The notes under the pieces are model-generated. The model saw only the letters and a list, made by a program, of their open reading frames with translations, had not been told where the DNA came from and searched no databases. A program made the translations under genes and the position numbers. Positions 37,647 to 62,673 of a DNA stretch of 64,000 bases are shown here, in pieces (the stretch's first letter is position 1; each line of letters begins with the position of its first letter). The DNA is taken from the NCBI RefSeq assembly GCF_000150275.1, contig NW_002060958.1:1258088-1322087 (forward strand). Direction: 5' to 3'. Source of the stretch: Trichoplax adhaerens. Lineage: Eukaryota > Animalia > Placozoa.

Positions 37647-46596
<8,950 letters not shown>

Positions 46597-59151: not shown

Positions 59152-59395
59152 CCTGCGTAATACAGATAAATTTTAGTGTATTCAATCAGATTTGGAAGAG
59201 TTATATTTTAATTGTCTTACATTTAGATGGTAAGATTACTATTACTTTAACAGAGTCTGTACCTTTTAATTTCTTTCAGCTATTCTACCTACGGTAATAG
59301 GCTAATTATTATTATGCGATAGTTACTACATTATATAGTATTTATCCCTCACAATTCGTTCTTATGTTATTTTCTGATCTCTGATCCAATTCTAG

Positions 59396-62202
59396 ATGGC
59401 TAGTACTAGCATCATAGTTGGCAATCAATCGGAGTTTCACCACTTAATTGAAAAAAATGATAGTCATGAAAGCCAGCATGGTGTTTCATATTTATCATCA
59501 GATCGTAGAAGATATGAAGCCTTCGGCGGAAATTTTAGTACAAGTCAATTCGATCAAGGTTCATTTCAGGTTGATTGCCGTAGCATTCCTTGGCAGGAAT
59601 CTAACTGTTACAATGGTGTTACTCAGCAGAATGCTTTGCAAATGTGTCCAAGAAGCAATTTATCACCTTCAGATCCAATTCTGAATCAACCTGATCCCGC
59701 TAATCATGATGTTTCATATCATCAGCCACCAGTATCGAGAATAATTGACCGTGAATATTCCTATGAATGTAATTCAAAGAACCATTTCGTGAGCCACTAT
59801 AAACCGGAACATCGCCATAGTAATTCATCGAGTCTTAGTTGTAGCACTTTGCAACCAGCAAGCCCATCATCCGATGATTTAAGAACCTCTCAAATGAATA
59901 TTCGAAATATTATTTCTAGTAATACGCAACCAAATGAAAGTTTAAACATCTATCCTGATAGGCATACAGGTAAAAAAGTACTTTATTTATAAAATTAATT
60001 CCAATTTCAGAAATTAATGCAATGATAGATAGTTATACTAATATACTACGACGTTACCTATACATGTCGTTAGTTTTTCACTAGTTTATATTTATCGATA
60101 TTTCGGATGAACTATCCTTAATTGCCTGCTACTTGCTTGCAATCGATGCTTATGGCTTAAAAGATGTAAAGAATCTACTATGTAAAATCAGTAGAAAAGT
60201 AGACGATGACTATCCTAGTCGTTGATTTCTTCTAATGGTAGATTTATAATTATTTTATAGACGGAAAACTGATGCAAAACTCATTTTATAGATATCATTT
60301 TGTACATAAACATCTCGTAACGCTAGATCTAATCGCTTAATTTTCACTCATGCATCTCTTGATCGTTTACTTTCCATCATTAGCTGAATGATGGTTGAAG
60401 CTTAATTAAGTACAAATTTAAACTAAAAATTTTAGTTAAGGCAGTTTAAGGCATAAAAGTTAAAATTTCGTAAATTTGAGAACATCCAATGTTGGAAAGA
60501 ATGTTGCTTCAAGGTGATGATAATTGCTATTATTGCTATATCCTCTCTATGGTGAATAATATCTGTGAGGTATTAGTCATGGGCTAAGAGGAGAATCTAG
60601 TGATCCATGTTTAAACATGCCGATATTGAAGAAGATTTTCCACTAAATGTACGATATGTAAGCATATTGGGTTAGCACATAGATTTATCTATCTACAGTA
60701 TCATCGGTGCGAATTGCCTATTTGCGGTGCGCATAAAGTATCTTCACAACATTAAACTAAGAACTACTATTTGCAGTAAAATTTTGGTGCATGAAATTTG
60801 ATTCTTTTAATTGTTCTTTAATCACTAGATTGAGCTAAATTGACTATCGATTGTAATTAAACGACAAAATAGTAAATTATTCATCATGCTTTACTTGGAT
60901 GTATGCCTTAATATCTGAAAGCCTCAATATTTTCTTGCTATAAAAGACGACATTATATGCCGAAAGTATCGTCTAAGAATAGATACTTGCATAATATTAC
61001 CATCAAACGTACAACATTGGCTATTTTTCACGCAATCTTAAAATTTTTTATATAGCTAATTTTGAATTACACTATTACTACTTTTAAAAGTGATGTAATT
61101 ATGAAAACATTGAATTTTCCCCAATTTGTTATGCCTTTGTTTGCTATTCCTATTTTAAATATAAATTTTCGAAGTAAAACAGAATTTCAAGATTTTACCT
61201 ACATCGCTTCTTTAATTAACAGCGAGGATATTAGAACAAATTAAATAATAGTAAGGATAGCCAGAATAGGATGTCTTTCCTGCTGTTTATATCGTGATGG
61301 AAAAATAACACCTAAATAAATAATCTGCCCGATACAGAACTATTGTCTATACAGTAAAGTCAGAGAAAGCTTTCCAAGAATGATATATTAATTATTTAAT
61401 TATTCGTAAACTGAACTTGTAAACGGATGTTGTTGCCATATTTTGCTAGTCTGACTTTACCTTTAGACGTAGAAATGATCAAATACTTAGATCTAGAGTT
61501 GCTACTGCCGATTTCAGTAGGTAGCTTACAATTACAAATGGAAATACAGATCTTGGTGTAGGTCGCGTGCTTAGTTCTCCTATTACTTAATCGCGAATAA
61601 TGATAAATGGCTATGAGTTCATTAAATTACCAAAACAAAACTTAAGAGCTTATAGATTGTAATAAGATTAAGAAATTCCTACTTTCTATCAAGTAGAATA
61701 TATAATGAAGCTTTGTTACTTTTGTAACACTTAGGATCGACAAAGAAAAGAAGAACTAGAACAAGTTTTTCCCCTGATCAGAAACGAGAATTAACAAATC
61801 GATTCGAAAGTAATCCTTACATCAAATCTAGTGAACGAAGAGCTTTAGCAGCTAAACTTGGTCTTCCTGATAGAGTGGTTAAGAATTACTTTCAAAACAG
61901 GCAAGGATTAATTGACATTATTAGACCCAAACTGTGTAGTGCGGATATAATACAAGATGGCAAGATTTACCTTTCGTTATGAAAATTTGATGATATTGAT
62001 CACCTAGTAAATTTCAATGTGGATTAATTCAATATTATCCGTATAAGTGATTTATGCGTATTACAATATTGAAGAAATATCCTGTTACTAAGCTATAATT
62101 ATAAATTATCATGAAATTTTTGGCTATTGTAGGCGGCTGAAAGATAAAAGATTGAAGCGTTCAGAAAATTTTTACAAACATGGTGGTGCAAACTTTTATT
62201 AA
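59396..62202 (+). CDS. Divergent homeobox protein, probably ANTP class, ~269 aa (exons 59396-59969, 61735-61900, 62133-62202; intron 2 is GC-AG)
   Basis: The Ser/Asn/Gln/Pro-rich exon 1 has a phase-1 donor ACAG|gtaaaa that joins cttag|GA in frame. Spliced homeodomain KRRTRTSFSPDQKRELTNRFESNPYIKSSERRALAAKLGLPDRVVKNYFQNR|RLKDKRLK keeps R5, F8, Q12, L16, F20, Y25, R31, L34, A35, L38, L40, F49, Q50, N51, R53 and K55. Confidence 0.88.
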
Positions 62203-62673
62203 TAGCAGCCTATATGATACAAGTATGTCAATAATATTTTGTCGTTCATAGAGATCTCGACGAAGAATATGATATACGTATCCATTTTTCTGCCATTAGC
62301 AATATTATCTTTATTGCAAACGGAAGATGATTGCAAATTTTATAACCTTCAACAAGTTAGCGATAACTGCTGATAAAATACAACTTTGGGATAAGTAGAA
62401 ACCTTGATGGTTTTCGATGTCTCAATGACTATTTTCGCAATCATTCAAAATTGCGGTATCATCGATTTCTATACATTTAGATTATGATATACTCGTAGAA
62501 CATGTTGCGTTTACGGTATACTGTAATATATAAAATTCAATACATGTTTATGCTATTTATCTAAGCGACGACTCTGTAAACAGATTATTTCTTAACAATT
62601 TTCTCTTTAATTTTACTCGACTGCACCTTTTCCTTTTTATATTCTCCACTATTATTATAATTAACAGTCGTAA

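What the first reader, a model, noticed from the sequence alone, without database searches (positions are those of the whole stretch)
59396..62202. Hidden divergent homeobox gene next to Mnx with an Evx/Rough-type KDKR helix-3 end
Seen: three exons splice in frame into a complete 60-aa homeodomain that the ORF track misses, ending FQNRRLKDKR. Known: D56 in R-R-x-K-D-K-R is characteristic of the Evx (RRMKDKR) and Rough (RRAKDKR) families, and Mnx, Rough and Evx are Hox-cluster neighbours in cnidarians, with Mnx-Rough paired in amphioxus. Against reference sequences recalled from memory I count about 28/60 identity to fly Rough (also S9, N23, I26, S29) and about 26/60 to EVX1 (also A36, P41). 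Inference: this is a fast-evolving Rough/Evx (or Hox-derived) gene still in its ancestral position, in a lineage where these families are usually considered missing if the placozoan assignment holds. I recall an orphan placozoan ANTP gene called Pnx being reported near Mnx. This may be the same gene, in which case the novelty would be the completed helix 3 and the family assignment.
Basis: partly seen in the sequence, partly recalled or inferred. Interest (0 to 1): 0.9.

Follow-up and report, generated by a model that had tools for sequence, protein, structure and literature searches.

The report
Placozoan orphan homeobox gene, model corrected
This is a real, expressed homeobox gene next to Mnx in Trichoplax, already published as the orphan 'NK-related2'; the public gene models checked miss a rare GC-AG intron that completes its DNA-binding helix, and its proposed Rough/Evx ancestry can be neither shown nor excluded.

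Summary
The window is Trichoplax adhaerens scaffold 16. The second intron has GC-AG ends and splits homeodomain codon 52, so helix 3 reads FQNR|RLKDKR and the protein has 269 aa.

The gene is not hidden. It is NK-related2 (EU700383, Schierwater 2008), also called TaNKLX2 (Ryan 2010). In Trichoplax sp. H2 it is RDD36222.1, named 'empty spiracles-like'. All three public versions mis-read helix 3, either by read-through or with a 25-aa insertion.

The Rough/Evx assignment is not supported, and it is not rejected either.
- **Identity:** it is flat across families (Emx-like 33/60, Rough 30, Evx 29, Dbx/Hlx 27, Mnx 27).
- **The KDKR ending:** it recurs in Gsx-like, PRD-like and LIM homeodomains.
- **Family marks:** Rough signature residues, the Rough post-homeodomain motif and the Rough/Evx intron positions are all absent.
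- **Placement:** likelihood puts the gene on deep ANTP branches. The Rough and Evx stems are 4-6 lnL worse under C20 (13 under LG), with AU p 0.3-0.45.
- **Mnx:** a sister relation to the adjacent Mnx is rejected (p 0.04 and 0.001).

Only adjacency to Mnx and the KDKRL end favour Rough. Verdict: a known orphan ANTP gene with a useful model correction.

The parts
59396..59969 (+). Exon 1 (coding part). ATG at 59396 with an in-frame TAG directly upstream (59393-59395). It encodes 191 codons plus 1 nt. The product is Ser/Asn/Gln-rich with no Pfam domain and no strict Eh1 motif. It has a single Trp, in SIPWQE.
   Evidence: sequence, ORF, translation. (covered by spliced contigs of X5 and X10; X10's contig starts at 59395). 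(no domain; motif scan). (it diverges about as fast as the introns).
59970..61734 (+). Intron 1, 1765 nt, GT..AG, phase 1 (codon G|GA).
   Evidence: joint 59967->61733, 'cut +2', GT..AG, seen in X5 and X10; splice sites are identical in Trichoplax sp. H2.
61735..61900 (+). Exon 2. It carries homeodomain residues 1-51 (from 61746) and the first two bases of codon 52. Q50, N51, R3, R5, L16, F20 and Y25 are canonical. N47 and Y48 stand in place of the usual I/V47 and W48.
   Evidence: PF00046, 65.8 bits. (in spliced contigs). (100% identical in H2).
61901..62132 (+). Intron 2, 232 nt, GC..AG (donor CAG|GCAAGG), phase 2 within homeodomain codon 52. Gene models that read through it or splice elsewhere mis-read helix 3.
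   Evidence: joint skipping 232 nt in X5 and X10, with 4-letter ambiguity. (site letters). (donor and acceptor conserved in H2). (public models without it).
62133..62202 (+). Exon 3, coding part. It holds the last base of codon 52, homeodomain residues 53-60 (62134-62157, R-L-K-D-K-R-L-K), a 14-residue tail, and the TAA stop at 62200-62202. Position 62138 is T>A (L54Q) in H2 and in three of the runs.
62203..62400 (+). 3' UTR. It continues beyond 62400: X10's contig holds another 886 nt. One run also shows an optional GT..AG intron at 62223-62299.
   Evidence: tables 5 and 8.
46027..46596 (+). Neighbouring Mnx, last exon (homeodomain 46345-46524). It lies 12.8 kb upstream on the same strand, with no ORF of 90 aa or more in between.
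   Evidence: 83.3 bits; Table S1 coordinates; Q27W40_TRIAD.

Best explanation
**What it is.** The locus is the already described Trichoplax gene NK-related2, also called TaNKLX2. It is a real, transcribed, three-exon gene encoding a 269-aa homeodomain transcription factor.

**The model correction.** Its recognition helix is split in codon 52 by a GC-AG intron. That intron is why published and automatic models truncate or disrupt helix 3. Correctly spliced, the homeodomain is complete: Q50, N51, R52, R53, K55, K57 and R58 are all present.

**How it most likely works (inferred).** It probably binds TAAT-type sites as a sequence-specific regulator. The unusual N47 and Y48 may alter its specificity.

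**Evolutionary status.** It is a fast-evolving orphan of the ANTP class, sitting next to Mnx. A 60-residue domain cannot resolve its family of origin. It is not demonstrably Rough or Evx, and it is not a recent copy of Mnx.
For: **Identity of genome and gene.**
- The genome has 105.6 Mb in 1414 contigs, and window coordinates map to scaffold 16 position 1319833, the published NK-related2.
- The same sequence appears as TaNKLX2 in Ryan 2010.
- The H2 orthologue is RDD36222.1.

**Transcription and splicing.**
- Spliced contigs come from two studies.
- The GC donor and the acceptor are conserved in H2.

**Domain.** PF00046 scores 65.8 bits.

**Orphan status.**
- In a search of 1.84 billion representatives, the best protein matching through a single homeodomain is an Emx-like bryozoan protein at only 47.6 bits and 55% identity.
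- PDB homeodomains score flat at 32-36 bits across Clawless, BARHL2, EN2, HHEX, Eve and TLX2.
- Identities to all sampled families lie between 22 and 33 of 60 (by eye; by script).
- Ryan 2010 placed it with bootstrap 4 on the longest branch.
- In my trees it falls outside the well-supported Ro+Evx clade (99/85).
- Placement puts 99.8% of the likelihood weight on deep ANTP branches.

**Not a Mnx copy.** A sister relation to Mnx is rejected, with AU p 0.001 under LG and 0.04 under C20.
Against: - No orthologue from a distant placozoan could be reached, so conservation rests on H1 versus H2. These are about 99% identical, and zero differences in the 166-nt exon 2 is not significant.
- The runs are labelled 'RNA?' by guess. 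The splicing itself is what shows they are RNA.
- DNA binding is inferred from residues and was not measured.
- Family sampling in my trees is incomplete. There are no Vax, En, Gbx, Mox, Msx or NK1 rows, and only single Emx and Dbx/Hlx rows.
- With full re-search under PMSF, constraining the gene to Ro, Evx or Emx gave trees as good as or better than the free tree. 'Orphan' therefore means unresolved, not shown to be unrelated.
Confidence: 0.72

Rival explanations
1. It is a highly derived orthologue of Rough (Ro) that has stayed in its ancestral position beside Mnx.
For: **Position.**
- The gene is adjacent to Mnx, 12.8 kb away, with no ORF of 90 aa or more in between.
- Rough and Mnx/HlxB9 are immediate neighbours in Nematostella and corals and are linked in amphioxus (PMC1779807; PMC6214176; PMC10719294).

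**Sequence.**
- The corrected end K55-D56-K57-R58-L59 is identical to anthozoan Ro.
- Identity to anthozoan Ro is 30/60, among the highest values.
- I26 and S29 are shared with fly Rough.

**Tests.**
- AU tests do not reject a Ro sister position: p 0.49, 0.22 and 0.30.
- Adding the exon-3 block improves the Ro placement by about 2 lnL.
Against: **Sequence marks.**
- Over residues 1-52 Ro is only 24/52, below Emx-like (28), a sponge NK (27) and TaDlx (25).
- The Ro-specific residues Q4, T7, T13, E19, E24, R28, R30, F32, A54 and E60 are all absent.
- The post-homeodomain motif EKA[QH]xDxQ[YL]R, present in the Ro loci examined, is absent.

**Gene structure.**
- Ro homeodomains are uninterrupted, or split at about 21/22 or 44/45, never at codon 52.
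- The exon encoding the Ro homeodomain starts about 11 codons before the domain; here it starts 4 codons before.

**Scores and placement.**
- The Ro HMM gives 55.8 bits. Clear non-members score higher: TaMnx 85, TaGsx 78, TaNot 69.
- The Ro stem is 5.9 lnL (C20) to 13.5 lnL (LG) worse than the best placement.

**Other.**
- KDKR recurs in other families.
- The R19/E30/S28 pattern is NK-like in the scheme of preprint 10.1101/2023.03.14.532566.
- In Nematostella, Rough and HlxB9 point in opposite directions; here the two genes are on the same strand.
Confidence: 0.2
2. It is a derived Evx orthologue.
For: - It has the K-D-K-R end, A36 and P41.
- Identity reaches up to 29/60.
- The constrained Evx tree was 2.1 lnL better than the free PMSF tree, p 0.56.
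- The Evx stem is only 3.8 lnL below the best placement under C20, p 0.45.
- Evx belongs to the same Hox neighbourhood as Mnx in cnidarians.
Against: - The very conserved Evx core (Y4, and the ENYVSRPRRCEL stretch at positions 23-34) is absent.
- Nearly all Evx loci have their intron at 46/47, not at codon 52.
- Nematostella Evx itself lacks D56; it ends RRMKSKR.
- The Evx HMM gives 54.1 bits, below non-members.
- Under LG the Evx stem is 12.8 lnL below the best placement.
Confidence: 0.04
3. It derives from an Emx-like or NK-like ANTP gene, as the automatic H2 name 'empty spiracles-like' and the 2008 name 'NK-related' imply.
For: - The highest identity of all rows is to an Emx-like protein: 33/60 overall and 28/52 in exon 2.
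- That protein, P0136, gives the best match made through one homeodomain in 1.84 billion representatives.
- Fly ems is 30/60 and EMX2 is 29/60 (counted by eye).
- The Emx-constrained tree was 5.2 lnL better than the free PMSF tree.
- The Emx branch is 3.0 lnL below the best placement under C20.
- The R19/E30 polarity is NK-like.
Against: - The Emx/Vax/Not hallmark V27-G28 (YVVG) is absent.
- The Emx intron in P0136 lies at about 44/45.
- Only one Emx row was available, so the test is weak.
- Under LG the Emx branch is 5.9 lnL below the best placement.
- The five Trichoplax NK-like genes with split homeodomains have their intron at 50/51 phase 0, not at codon 52 phase 2.
Confidence: 0.12
4. It is a placozoan-specific tandem duplicate of the adjacent Mnx that diverged fast.
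For: - The two genes are adjacent and on the same strand.
- Identity to TaMnx is 27/60.
Against: - A sister position to TaMnx is 10.1 lnL (C20, AU p 0.04) and 19.7 lnL (LG, AU p 0.001) worse than the best placement.
- The Mnx HMM gives 45.9 bits, against 116 for TaMnx.
- TaMnx's homeodomain is uninterrupted.
Confidence: 0.03

Closest known systems
Trichoplax adhaerens NK-related2 (EU700383; Schierwater et al. 2008, PMC2515636), also TaNKLX2 (Ryan et al. 2010, PMC2959044)
   Same: It is the same locus (scaffold 16, 1319833 onward) with identical residues 1-52. It was already classed as a highly derived ANTP gene linked to Mnx, and its family was already unresolved.
   Different: The published homeodomain was read straight on as an ORF ('no intron') and ends Q-G-L-I-D-I-I-R. 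Transcripts show a GC-AG intron in codon 52 and the end R-L-K-D-K-R-L-K.
Trichoplax sp. H2 RDD36222.1, 'Homeotic protein empty spiracles-like protein' (294 aa)
   Same: It is the orthologous locus (L152). Exons 1 and 2 and the last 20 or so residues are the same, and exon 2 is 100% identical.
   Different: The model uses another intron and carries 25 extra residues inside helix 3. None of the laid contigs supports that junction. H2 has Q54 where the window has L54.
Rough (Ro) family
   Same: - It has the K55-D56-K57-R58-L59 end (anthozoan type).
- It shares I26.
- It neighbours Mnx.
- It has a Q50 ANTP-type homeodomain.
   Different: - It lacks the Ro signature residues and the post-homeodomain EKAQ motif.
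- Its exon structure differs.
- There is no family-specific HMM signal.
- It does not group with Ro in the ML trees.
Evx family
   Same: It shares the KDKR end, A36 and P41, and it lies in a Hox-neighbourhood context.
   Different: It lacks the invariant Evx core and the 46/47 intron. Nematostella Evx has S56.
Emx (empty spiracles) family, e.g. the Watersipora protein P0136
   Same: It gives the highest pairwise identity (33/60), and it shares the R-T-x-F-S-P start, FExN in helix 1 and ERxxLA.
   Different: There is no V27/G28, and the Emx intron is at about 44/45. Only one Emx reference was available here.
[quoted passage not shown]
   Same: - All have long branches.
- All have an acidic residue at position 56.
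- NPY at positions 23-25 is shared with TaHoxlx, and N47 with TaNKLX1.
- Their introns sit inside helix 3.
- They take most of the placement weight.
   Different: - Intron positions differ: codon 53 phase 1 in TaHoxlx and 50/51 phase 0 in TaNKLX1.
- The pairing is flagged as long-branch attraction.
- TaNKLX1 groups with Msxlx in Ryan's tree.

Membership tests
Homeodomain (PF00046) | Significant match to the Pfam model, with the helix-3 residues F49, N51 and R53 | tested here: met
   Exon 2 scores 65.8 bits, E 3e-18 and 64.8 bits in the genome scan. R53, K55, K57 and R58 are supplied by exon 3.
ANTP class | No proline at position 26 (criterion of preprint 10.1101/2023.03.14.532566), and no PRD, LIM, POU, SIX or ZF companion domains | tested here: met
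   I26. Pfam finds no other domain in exon 1 or in P0272.
ANTP class | Falls inside the ANTP class in a tree that includes non-ANTP homeodomains | tested here: inconclusive
   The placement weight sits on the deepest ANTP branches and on the branch leading to the PRD/LIM/ZFHX rows. Positions inside the LIM/ZFHX group are 8 lnL worse.
Rough (Ro) | Groups with Ro homeodomains in phylogeny | tested here: inconclusive
   It is not with Ro in the ML trees. The Ro stem is -5.9 lnL (C20) and -13.5 lnL (LG). AU p is 0.30, 0.22 and 0.49, so Ro is not rejected.
Rough (Ro) | Ro signature residues: Q4, T7, T13, E19, E24, R28, R30, F32, A54, E60 | tested here: not met
   None of the ten is present. The comparison used Dmro, BfRo and NvRO and 12 metagenomic Ro homeodomains.
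Rough (Ro) | Conserved extension after the homeodomain, EKA[QH]xDxQ[YL]R | tested here: not met
   The motif (with small variations) follows the homeodomain in all 13 Ro loci printed. Here the sequence after K60 is RSENFYKH....
Rough (Ro) | K55-D56-K57-R58 end of helix 3 | tested here: met
   The feature is not exclusive: it also occurs in Gsx-like, PRD-like, LIM and RRTKDKR-type homeodomains and in TaLim3.4.
Rough (Ro) | Genomic neighbour of Mnx | tested here: met
   The gene lies 12.8 kb downstream of Mnx with no ORF of 90 aa or more between them. The expectation comes from the literature. I could not reproduce the adjacency in other animals: the amphioxus Mnx locus +/-10 kb and an anthozoan-type Ro contig each hold only one homeobox.
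Rough (Ro) | Family-specific profile scores above the scores of non-members | tested here: not met
   The Ro HMM gives 55.8 bits, against 58-85 bits for Trichoplax Mnx, Gsx, Not, Hmx, Dlx, NK6, Dbx/Hlx and Hex. As a control, TaMnx scores 116 on the Mnx HMM.
Evx | Invariant core (Y4; the ENYVSRPRRCEL stretch at positions 23-34; M54) | tested here: not met
   It is absent. The comparison used 27 Evx homeodomains and the Hs, Dm and Nv Evx sequences.
Evx | Homeobox intron at 46/47 (widespread in the family) | tested here: not met
   Nearly all Evx loci break before residue 47. This gene breaks in codon 52. The criterion is weak: L112 and Nematostella Evx are uninterrupted.
Evx | Groups with Evx in phylogeny | tested here: inconclusive
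   It lies outside the Evx clade. The Evx stem is -3.8 lnL (C20, p 0.45) and -12.8 lnL (LG, p 0.13). The constrained PMSF tree is +2.1 lnL.
Emx | Y25-V-V-G28 motif and the 44/45 intron | tested here: not met
   This gene has I26-K27-S28. The intron of P0136 lies at about 44/45.
Mnx (recent duplicate) | Sister to TaMnx or to the Mnx clade | tested here: not met
   AU p is 0.001 (LG) and 0.04 (C20), with dlnL -19.7 and -10.1.

The most novel reading that the evidence does not exclude
TaNKLX2 is the placozoan orthologue of Rough. On this reading the Mnx-Rough gene pair of the extended ('Super') Hox neighbourhood already existed in the common ancestor of placozoans, cnidarians and bilaterians. Trichoplax would then retain a second extended-Hox-type neighbour at what has been treated as a Hox-less locus. 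The gene went unrecognised because every published analysis used a mis-spliced helix 3.
Probability: 0.2. Interest if true: 0.6.

Novelty: already known. Interest (0 to 1): 0.33.

Why it matters
Placozoan ANTP genes are used to reconstruct the origin of the Hox, ParaHox and NK clusters. The homeodomain of this gene has entered at least two published data sets (2008 and 2010) with eight wrong C-terminal residues. An NCBI model of the sister species carries a 25-residue insertion in the recognition helix.

The corrected model matters in three ways.
- It restores R53, K55, K57 and R58, so the gene looks like a functional DNA-binding factor rather than a decaying one.
- It shows that GC-AG introns can hide parts of conserved domains from gene predictors.
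- It makes the question 'is the Mnx neighbour a Rough relative?' properly testable once orthologues from other placozoans are added.

It does not by itself change the picture of the placozoan gene repertoire.

Tried and rejected
**Database searches, exon by exon and by reference.**
- Exon 1 found nothing in the 5.8-billion protein set. The H2 protein is hidden behind a 60-aa cluster representative.
- Exon 2 found only its own 60-aa record.
- The 1.84-billion representative search was dominated by proteins with several homeodomains, whose scores add up.
- The ESM Atlas gave only generic homeodomain clusters.

**The joined (spliced) protein was sent to no search tool; that step was left out.**
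- For identities, trees, placement and HMM scoring, the two exon-encoded blocks (homeodomain 1-52 and 53-60) were read from window.fa inside scripts and put in their alignment columns.
- The identity count, the LG placement and the HMM scoring were also run on exon 2 alone, with the same answer.

**Reference sequences without a by-reference handle.**
- I used them only for counts by eye.
- Families present only there (Vax, En, Gbx, Mox, Msx, NK1 and others) are therefore missing from my trees.

**Attempts to reach cnidarian Rough through Mnx.**
- The Mnx search returned only bilaterian Mnx.
- Amphioxus MNX1 +/-10 kb holds no second homeobox.
- An anthozoan-type Ro contig has no second homeobox within 10 kb.

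**Tree searches that gave nothing usable.**
- Full constrained IQ-TREE searches did not finish in time.
- The '-fast' constrained searches were dominated by backbone noise, and I disregarded them.
- One treekit test (query + Mnx clade) did not finish. The placement test replaced it.

**My own idea that the three derived Trichoplax genes form one group is not established.**
- The pairing with TaNKLX1 (89/52) is flagged as long branches meeting.
- TaNKLX1 belongs to Msxlx in Ryan's tree.

**'Pnx':** no placozoan gene of that name was found in the library.

**P0002**, at first taken for a Ro/Evx-like protein, is a lepidopteran gene model that repeats one homeodomain six times.
Full report
**What is there.**

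The genome behind the window has 105,631,681 bases in 1414 contigs. The window is contig C1399, 1258088-1322087. These coordinates match scaffold 16 of the Trichoplax adhaerens assembly used by Schierwater et al. 2008. Their Table S1 lists Mnx at 1304432-1304611 and 'NK-related2' (EU700383) at 1319833-1320012. In window terms those are 46345-46524 and 61746-61925.

A six-frame Pfam scan of the whole genome finds 35 homeodomain matches. Two are in this window: Mnx at 83.3 bits, and the finding's exon 2 at 64.8 bits, covering model positions 1-51 only.

**The observation.**

- An ORF starts at ATG 59396, with an in-frame TAG directly upstream, and runs to a GT donor at 59970.
- An AG acceptor at 61733-61734 opens an exon encoding homeodomain residues 1-52.
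- After a further AG at 62131-62132 the frame reads R-L-K-D-K-R-L-K and stops at 62200-62202.

I laid the contigs of four public runs on 59300-62400. Two runs from different studies (X5, X10) each hold one contig that joins all three exons. Neither contig covers either intron.
- The first joint is 59969|61735 with GT..AG ends.
- The second joint skips 232 nt. Four letters (AGGC) fit on either side.
- The only recognised splice-site pair within that range is a GC..AG intron at 61901-62132, with donor CAG|GCAAGG.
- Whichever placement is chosen, the mRNA is the same and reads Q50 N51 R52 R53 L54 K55 D56 K57 R58.

The CDS is 810 nt, giving 269 aa.

**It is not a hidden gene, but the three public models checked are wrong.**

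- Schierwater 2008 read the homeobox straight on ('no intron, orf'), ending Q-G-L-I-D-I-I-R. They called the gene highly derived.
- Ryan et al. 2010 reused that sequence as TaNKLX2. Their ML tree puts it beside the Hex clade with bootstrap 4 and posterior 26, on a branch of length 1.64.
- The cluster of the 60-aa record also holds a 55-aa NCBI fragment. It further holds the Trichoplax sp. H2 protein RDD36222.1 (294 aa), named 'Homeotic protein empty spiracles-like protein'.
- The H2 model has exons 1 and 2 but uses a different intron. It carries 25 extra residues between FQNR and RQKDKR. No laid contig shows that junction.
- The GC donor and the acceptor are identical in H2.
- I found no 'Pnx' gene of placozoans in the paper library.

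**Conservation.**

Identity between the window and H2 is as follows.

| Segment | Identity |
|---|---|
| Exon 1 | 98.8% |
| Intron 1 | 99.1% |
| Exon 2 | 100% |
| Intron 2 | 97.8% |
| Exon 3 | one difference (L54Q) |

- Nine of the ten coding variants seen across the runs change the amino acid, eight in exon 1 plus L54Q in exon 3; the tenth is a silent change in exon 1, and exon 2 has none.
- The N-terminal 191 residues are Ser/Asn/Gln-rich, with no Pfam domain and no strict Eh1 motif. Their single Trp sits in SIPWQE.
- The homeodomain keeps R3, R5, L16, F20, Y25, F49, Q50, N51 and R53, but it has N47 and Y48.

**Is it Rough or Evx? Similarity.**

Other families score the same or higher.

| Reference (by eye) | Identity |
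|---|---|
| Fly ems | 30 |
| Nematostella Ro | 30 |
| EMX2 | 29 |
| Sponge NK5.7c | 28 |
| HHEX | 27 |
| TaDbx/Hlx | 27 |
| TaMnx | 27 |
| DBX1 | 26 |
| BARHL2 | 26 |
| VAX1 | 25 |
| GBX2 | 25 |
| engrailed | 22 |

A script on by-reference sequences gives the following.

| Reference (by script) | Of 60 | Of 52 (exon 2) |
|---|---|---|
| Emx-like P0136 | 33 | 28 |
| Sponge NK | 30 | 27 |
| Anthozoan Ro | 30 | 24 |
| A Gsx-like group | 30 | 24 |
| Evx (best) | 29 | 23 |

- The rank of Ro and Evx thus rests on six identities in the last eight residues.
- PDB homeodomains score flat at 32-36 bits.
- In 1.84 billion representatives, the best protein matching through a single homeodomain is a bryozoan Emx-like protein at 47.6 bits.

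**Is D56 diagnostic?**

I scanned metagenome contigs for the DNA pattern encoding W-F-Q-N-R-R-x-K-D-K-R. It returned 118 loci. Besides Evx and Rough, the same ending occurs in several other groups.
- A Gsx-like group (RRVKDKR).
- An RRTKDKRERL group.
- Two PRD-like homeodomains with P26.
- A LIM-type homeodomain.

It also occurs in TaLim3.4, and ZFHX homeodomains end K-[ED]-K-K. Nematostella Evx has S56. The KDKR ending is therefore recurrent. It is not a synapomorphy of Evx and Rough.

**Family features.**

- The loci gave 12 distinct Rough and 27 Evx homeodomains by reference.
- Rough is defined by Q4, T7, T13, E19, E24, R28, R30, F32, A54 and E60. None of these is present here.
- A conserved EKA[QH]xDxQ[YL]R extension (small variations) follows the homeodomain in all 13 Rough loci printed, and it is absent here.
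- The exon carrying the Rough homeodomain starts about 11 codons before the domain. Here it starts 4 codons before.
- Rough homeodomains are uninterrupted, or split near 21/22 or 44/45. Nematostella Rough has two exons and an uninterrupted homeodomain.
- Evx is split at 46/47 in nearly all loci.
- This gene is split in codon 52, phase 2.
- Within Trichoplax, NK2a, NK2b, Dbx/Hlx, Hex and NKLX1 are all split at 50/51, phase 0. Hoxlx is split in codon 53, phase 1.
- The Emx-like P0136 is split at about 44/45.
- In the residue scheme of preprint 10.1101/2023.03.14.532566, Hox-like genes, including Rough and Evx, have E19/R30 and R28. This gene has R19/E30/S28, the NK-like polarity.
- Family HMMs give Ro 55.8, Evx 54.1 and Mnx 45.9 bits. 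Trichoplax genes that are certainly not Rough score 58-85 bits on the Ro HMM. The true orthologue TaMnx scores 116 bits on the Mnx HMM.

**Trees.**

The joined protein was sent to no search tool. For the trees, the two exon-encoded blocks were read from the window file inside the script.

- In a 94-row ML tree (LG+C20 PMSF), Ro+Evx form a clade with support 99/85. The gene lies outside it, next to the only other Y48 homeodomain, which sits on a very long branch.
- With the odd rows removed, the gene pairs with TaNKLX1 (89/52). The tool flags this as long branches meeting.
- With full re-search, constraining it to Ro costs 0.01 lnL (AU p 0.49). Constraining to Evx gains 2.1 lnL (p 0.56) and to Emx gains 5.2 lnL (p 0.70). 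The likelihood surface is flat.
- Grafting the gene onto every branch of a fixed backbone under LG+G4 puts 99.8% of the likelihood weight on a comb of deep branches. These are TaNKLX1, TaHoxlx, a sponge NK, and the base of ANTP next to the PRD/LIM/ZFHX rows.
- With exon 2 alone, the Ro and Evx stems are about 2 lnL worse still.

| Position | dlnL, LG+G4 (AU p), | dlnL, LG+C20+G4 (AU p), |
|---|---|---|
| Emx | -5.9 (0.24) | -3.0 (0.21) |
| Evx stem | -12.8 (0.13) | -3.8 (0.45) |
| Ro stem | -13.5 (0.22) | -5.9 (0.30) |
| TaDbx/Hlx | -11.7 (0.26) | -5.95 (0.28) |
| TaHex | -16.95 (0.05) | -9.9 (0.011) |
| TaMnx | -19.7 (0.001) | -10.1 (0.04) |

Rough and Evx are therefore neither preferred nor rejected. 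A recent Mnx duplicate is rejected.

**Synteny.**

- The gene lies 12.8 kb downstream of Mnx on the same strand, with no ORF of 90 aa or more in between.
- The literature documents the order Rough-HlxB9(Mnx)-Hox-Evx in Nematostella. There HlxB9 has the opposite orientation (PMC1779807).
- A SuperHox cluster on Nematostella chromosome 2 is also described (PMC10719294).
- This is the one positive argument for Rough that does not come from the homeodomain.
- I could not reproduce the adjacency in other animals with the loci available.

**Conclusion.**

Shown here:
- The three-exon, GC-AG-spliced, transcribed gene.
- Its identity with a published orphan gene.
- The errors in the three public models checked.
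- The recurrence of the KDKR ending in other families.
- The absence of Rough and Evx family marks.
- The rejection of a Mnx-duplicate origin.

Inferred:
- The protein is a functional TAAT-type DNA-binding factor with possibly altered specificity (N47, Y48).
- The N-terminal region is weakly constrained.

Open:
- The family of origin. I put Rough at about 0.2 (position plus KDKRL), an Emx/NK-like origin at about 0.12, Evx at about 0.04 and Mnx at about 0.03. The rest is unresolvable with present data.

Noticed in passing
L013, L014, L015, L024, L026 (Trichoplax NK2b, NK2a, Dbx/Hlx, Hex, NKLX1/Msxlx) and L030 (Hoxlx): Five Trichoplax ANTP genes share a phase-0 intron exactly between homeodomain codons 50 and 51. 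Hoxlx has one in codon 53 (phase 1) and this gene has one in codon 52 (phase 2). Seven of the 14 ANTP genes are thus split within 7 nt of each other inside helix 3. The Mnx, Emx, Rough and Evx loci of other animals seen here are split at 44/45 or 46/47 instead.
   Followed up: partly
window 62138: T in the reference (CTG, L54) but A (CAG, Q54) in Trichoplax sp. H2 and in runs X5, X9 and X10. Two of those runs carry the same organism label as most holders of this stretch. It is either an allele or an error in the reference assembly.
   Followed up: partly
window 59396-59969: Eight of the nine exon-1 variants seen across runs and H2 change the amino acid, and exon 1 diverges from H2 as fast as the introns (98.8% against 99.1% and 97.8%). 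The N-terminal region looks almost unconstrained.
   Followed up: partly
window 59585-59596 (residues 63-66, I-P-W-Q): The only tryptophan of the N-terminal region sits in a hexapeptide-like I-P-W-Q motif about 130 residues before the homeodomain. It could be a degenerate PBX-contact motif or chance.
   Followed up: no
window 62223-62299 and beyond 62400: One run (X5) shows an optional GT..AG intron in the 3' UTR. X10's transcript contig extends another 886 nt past the end of the laid stretch, so either the 3' UTR is long or a neighbouring transcript is joined on.
   Followed up: no
L038, L052, L078, L088 (metagenome contigs): These contigs carry a group of Gsx-type homeodomains (YLTRLRRIQVA ... 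[13 protein letters not shown]) that end K-D-K-R instead of the usual K-[WH]-K-K. In the tree they are nested with Gsx at 100/90 support.
   Followed up: partly
P0037 (WP_257266176.1) and P0274 (DAM29994.1): A two-homeodomain protein is filed under the bacterium Endozoicomonas sp. ONNA2 on a 3.1-kb contig. A 51-aa Tlx-like homeodomain fragment is filed under a Caudoviricetes MAG. Both look like animal DNA carried into microbial records.
   Followed up: no
P0035 (ENA metagenome protein, 368 aa): This is the only other homeodomain seen with K46-N47-Y48-F49 (VKNYF). It is otherwise extremely divergent, of unknown organism, and it attracts this gene in the tree.
   Followed up: partly
L152:11555-13355 (Trichoplax sp. 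H2): The next called gene downstream of the homeobox gene, 4.3 kb after its stop on the same strand, encodes an ankyrin-repeat protein. It could serve for microsynteny comparisons with cnidarian Rough/Mnx loci.
   Followed up: no
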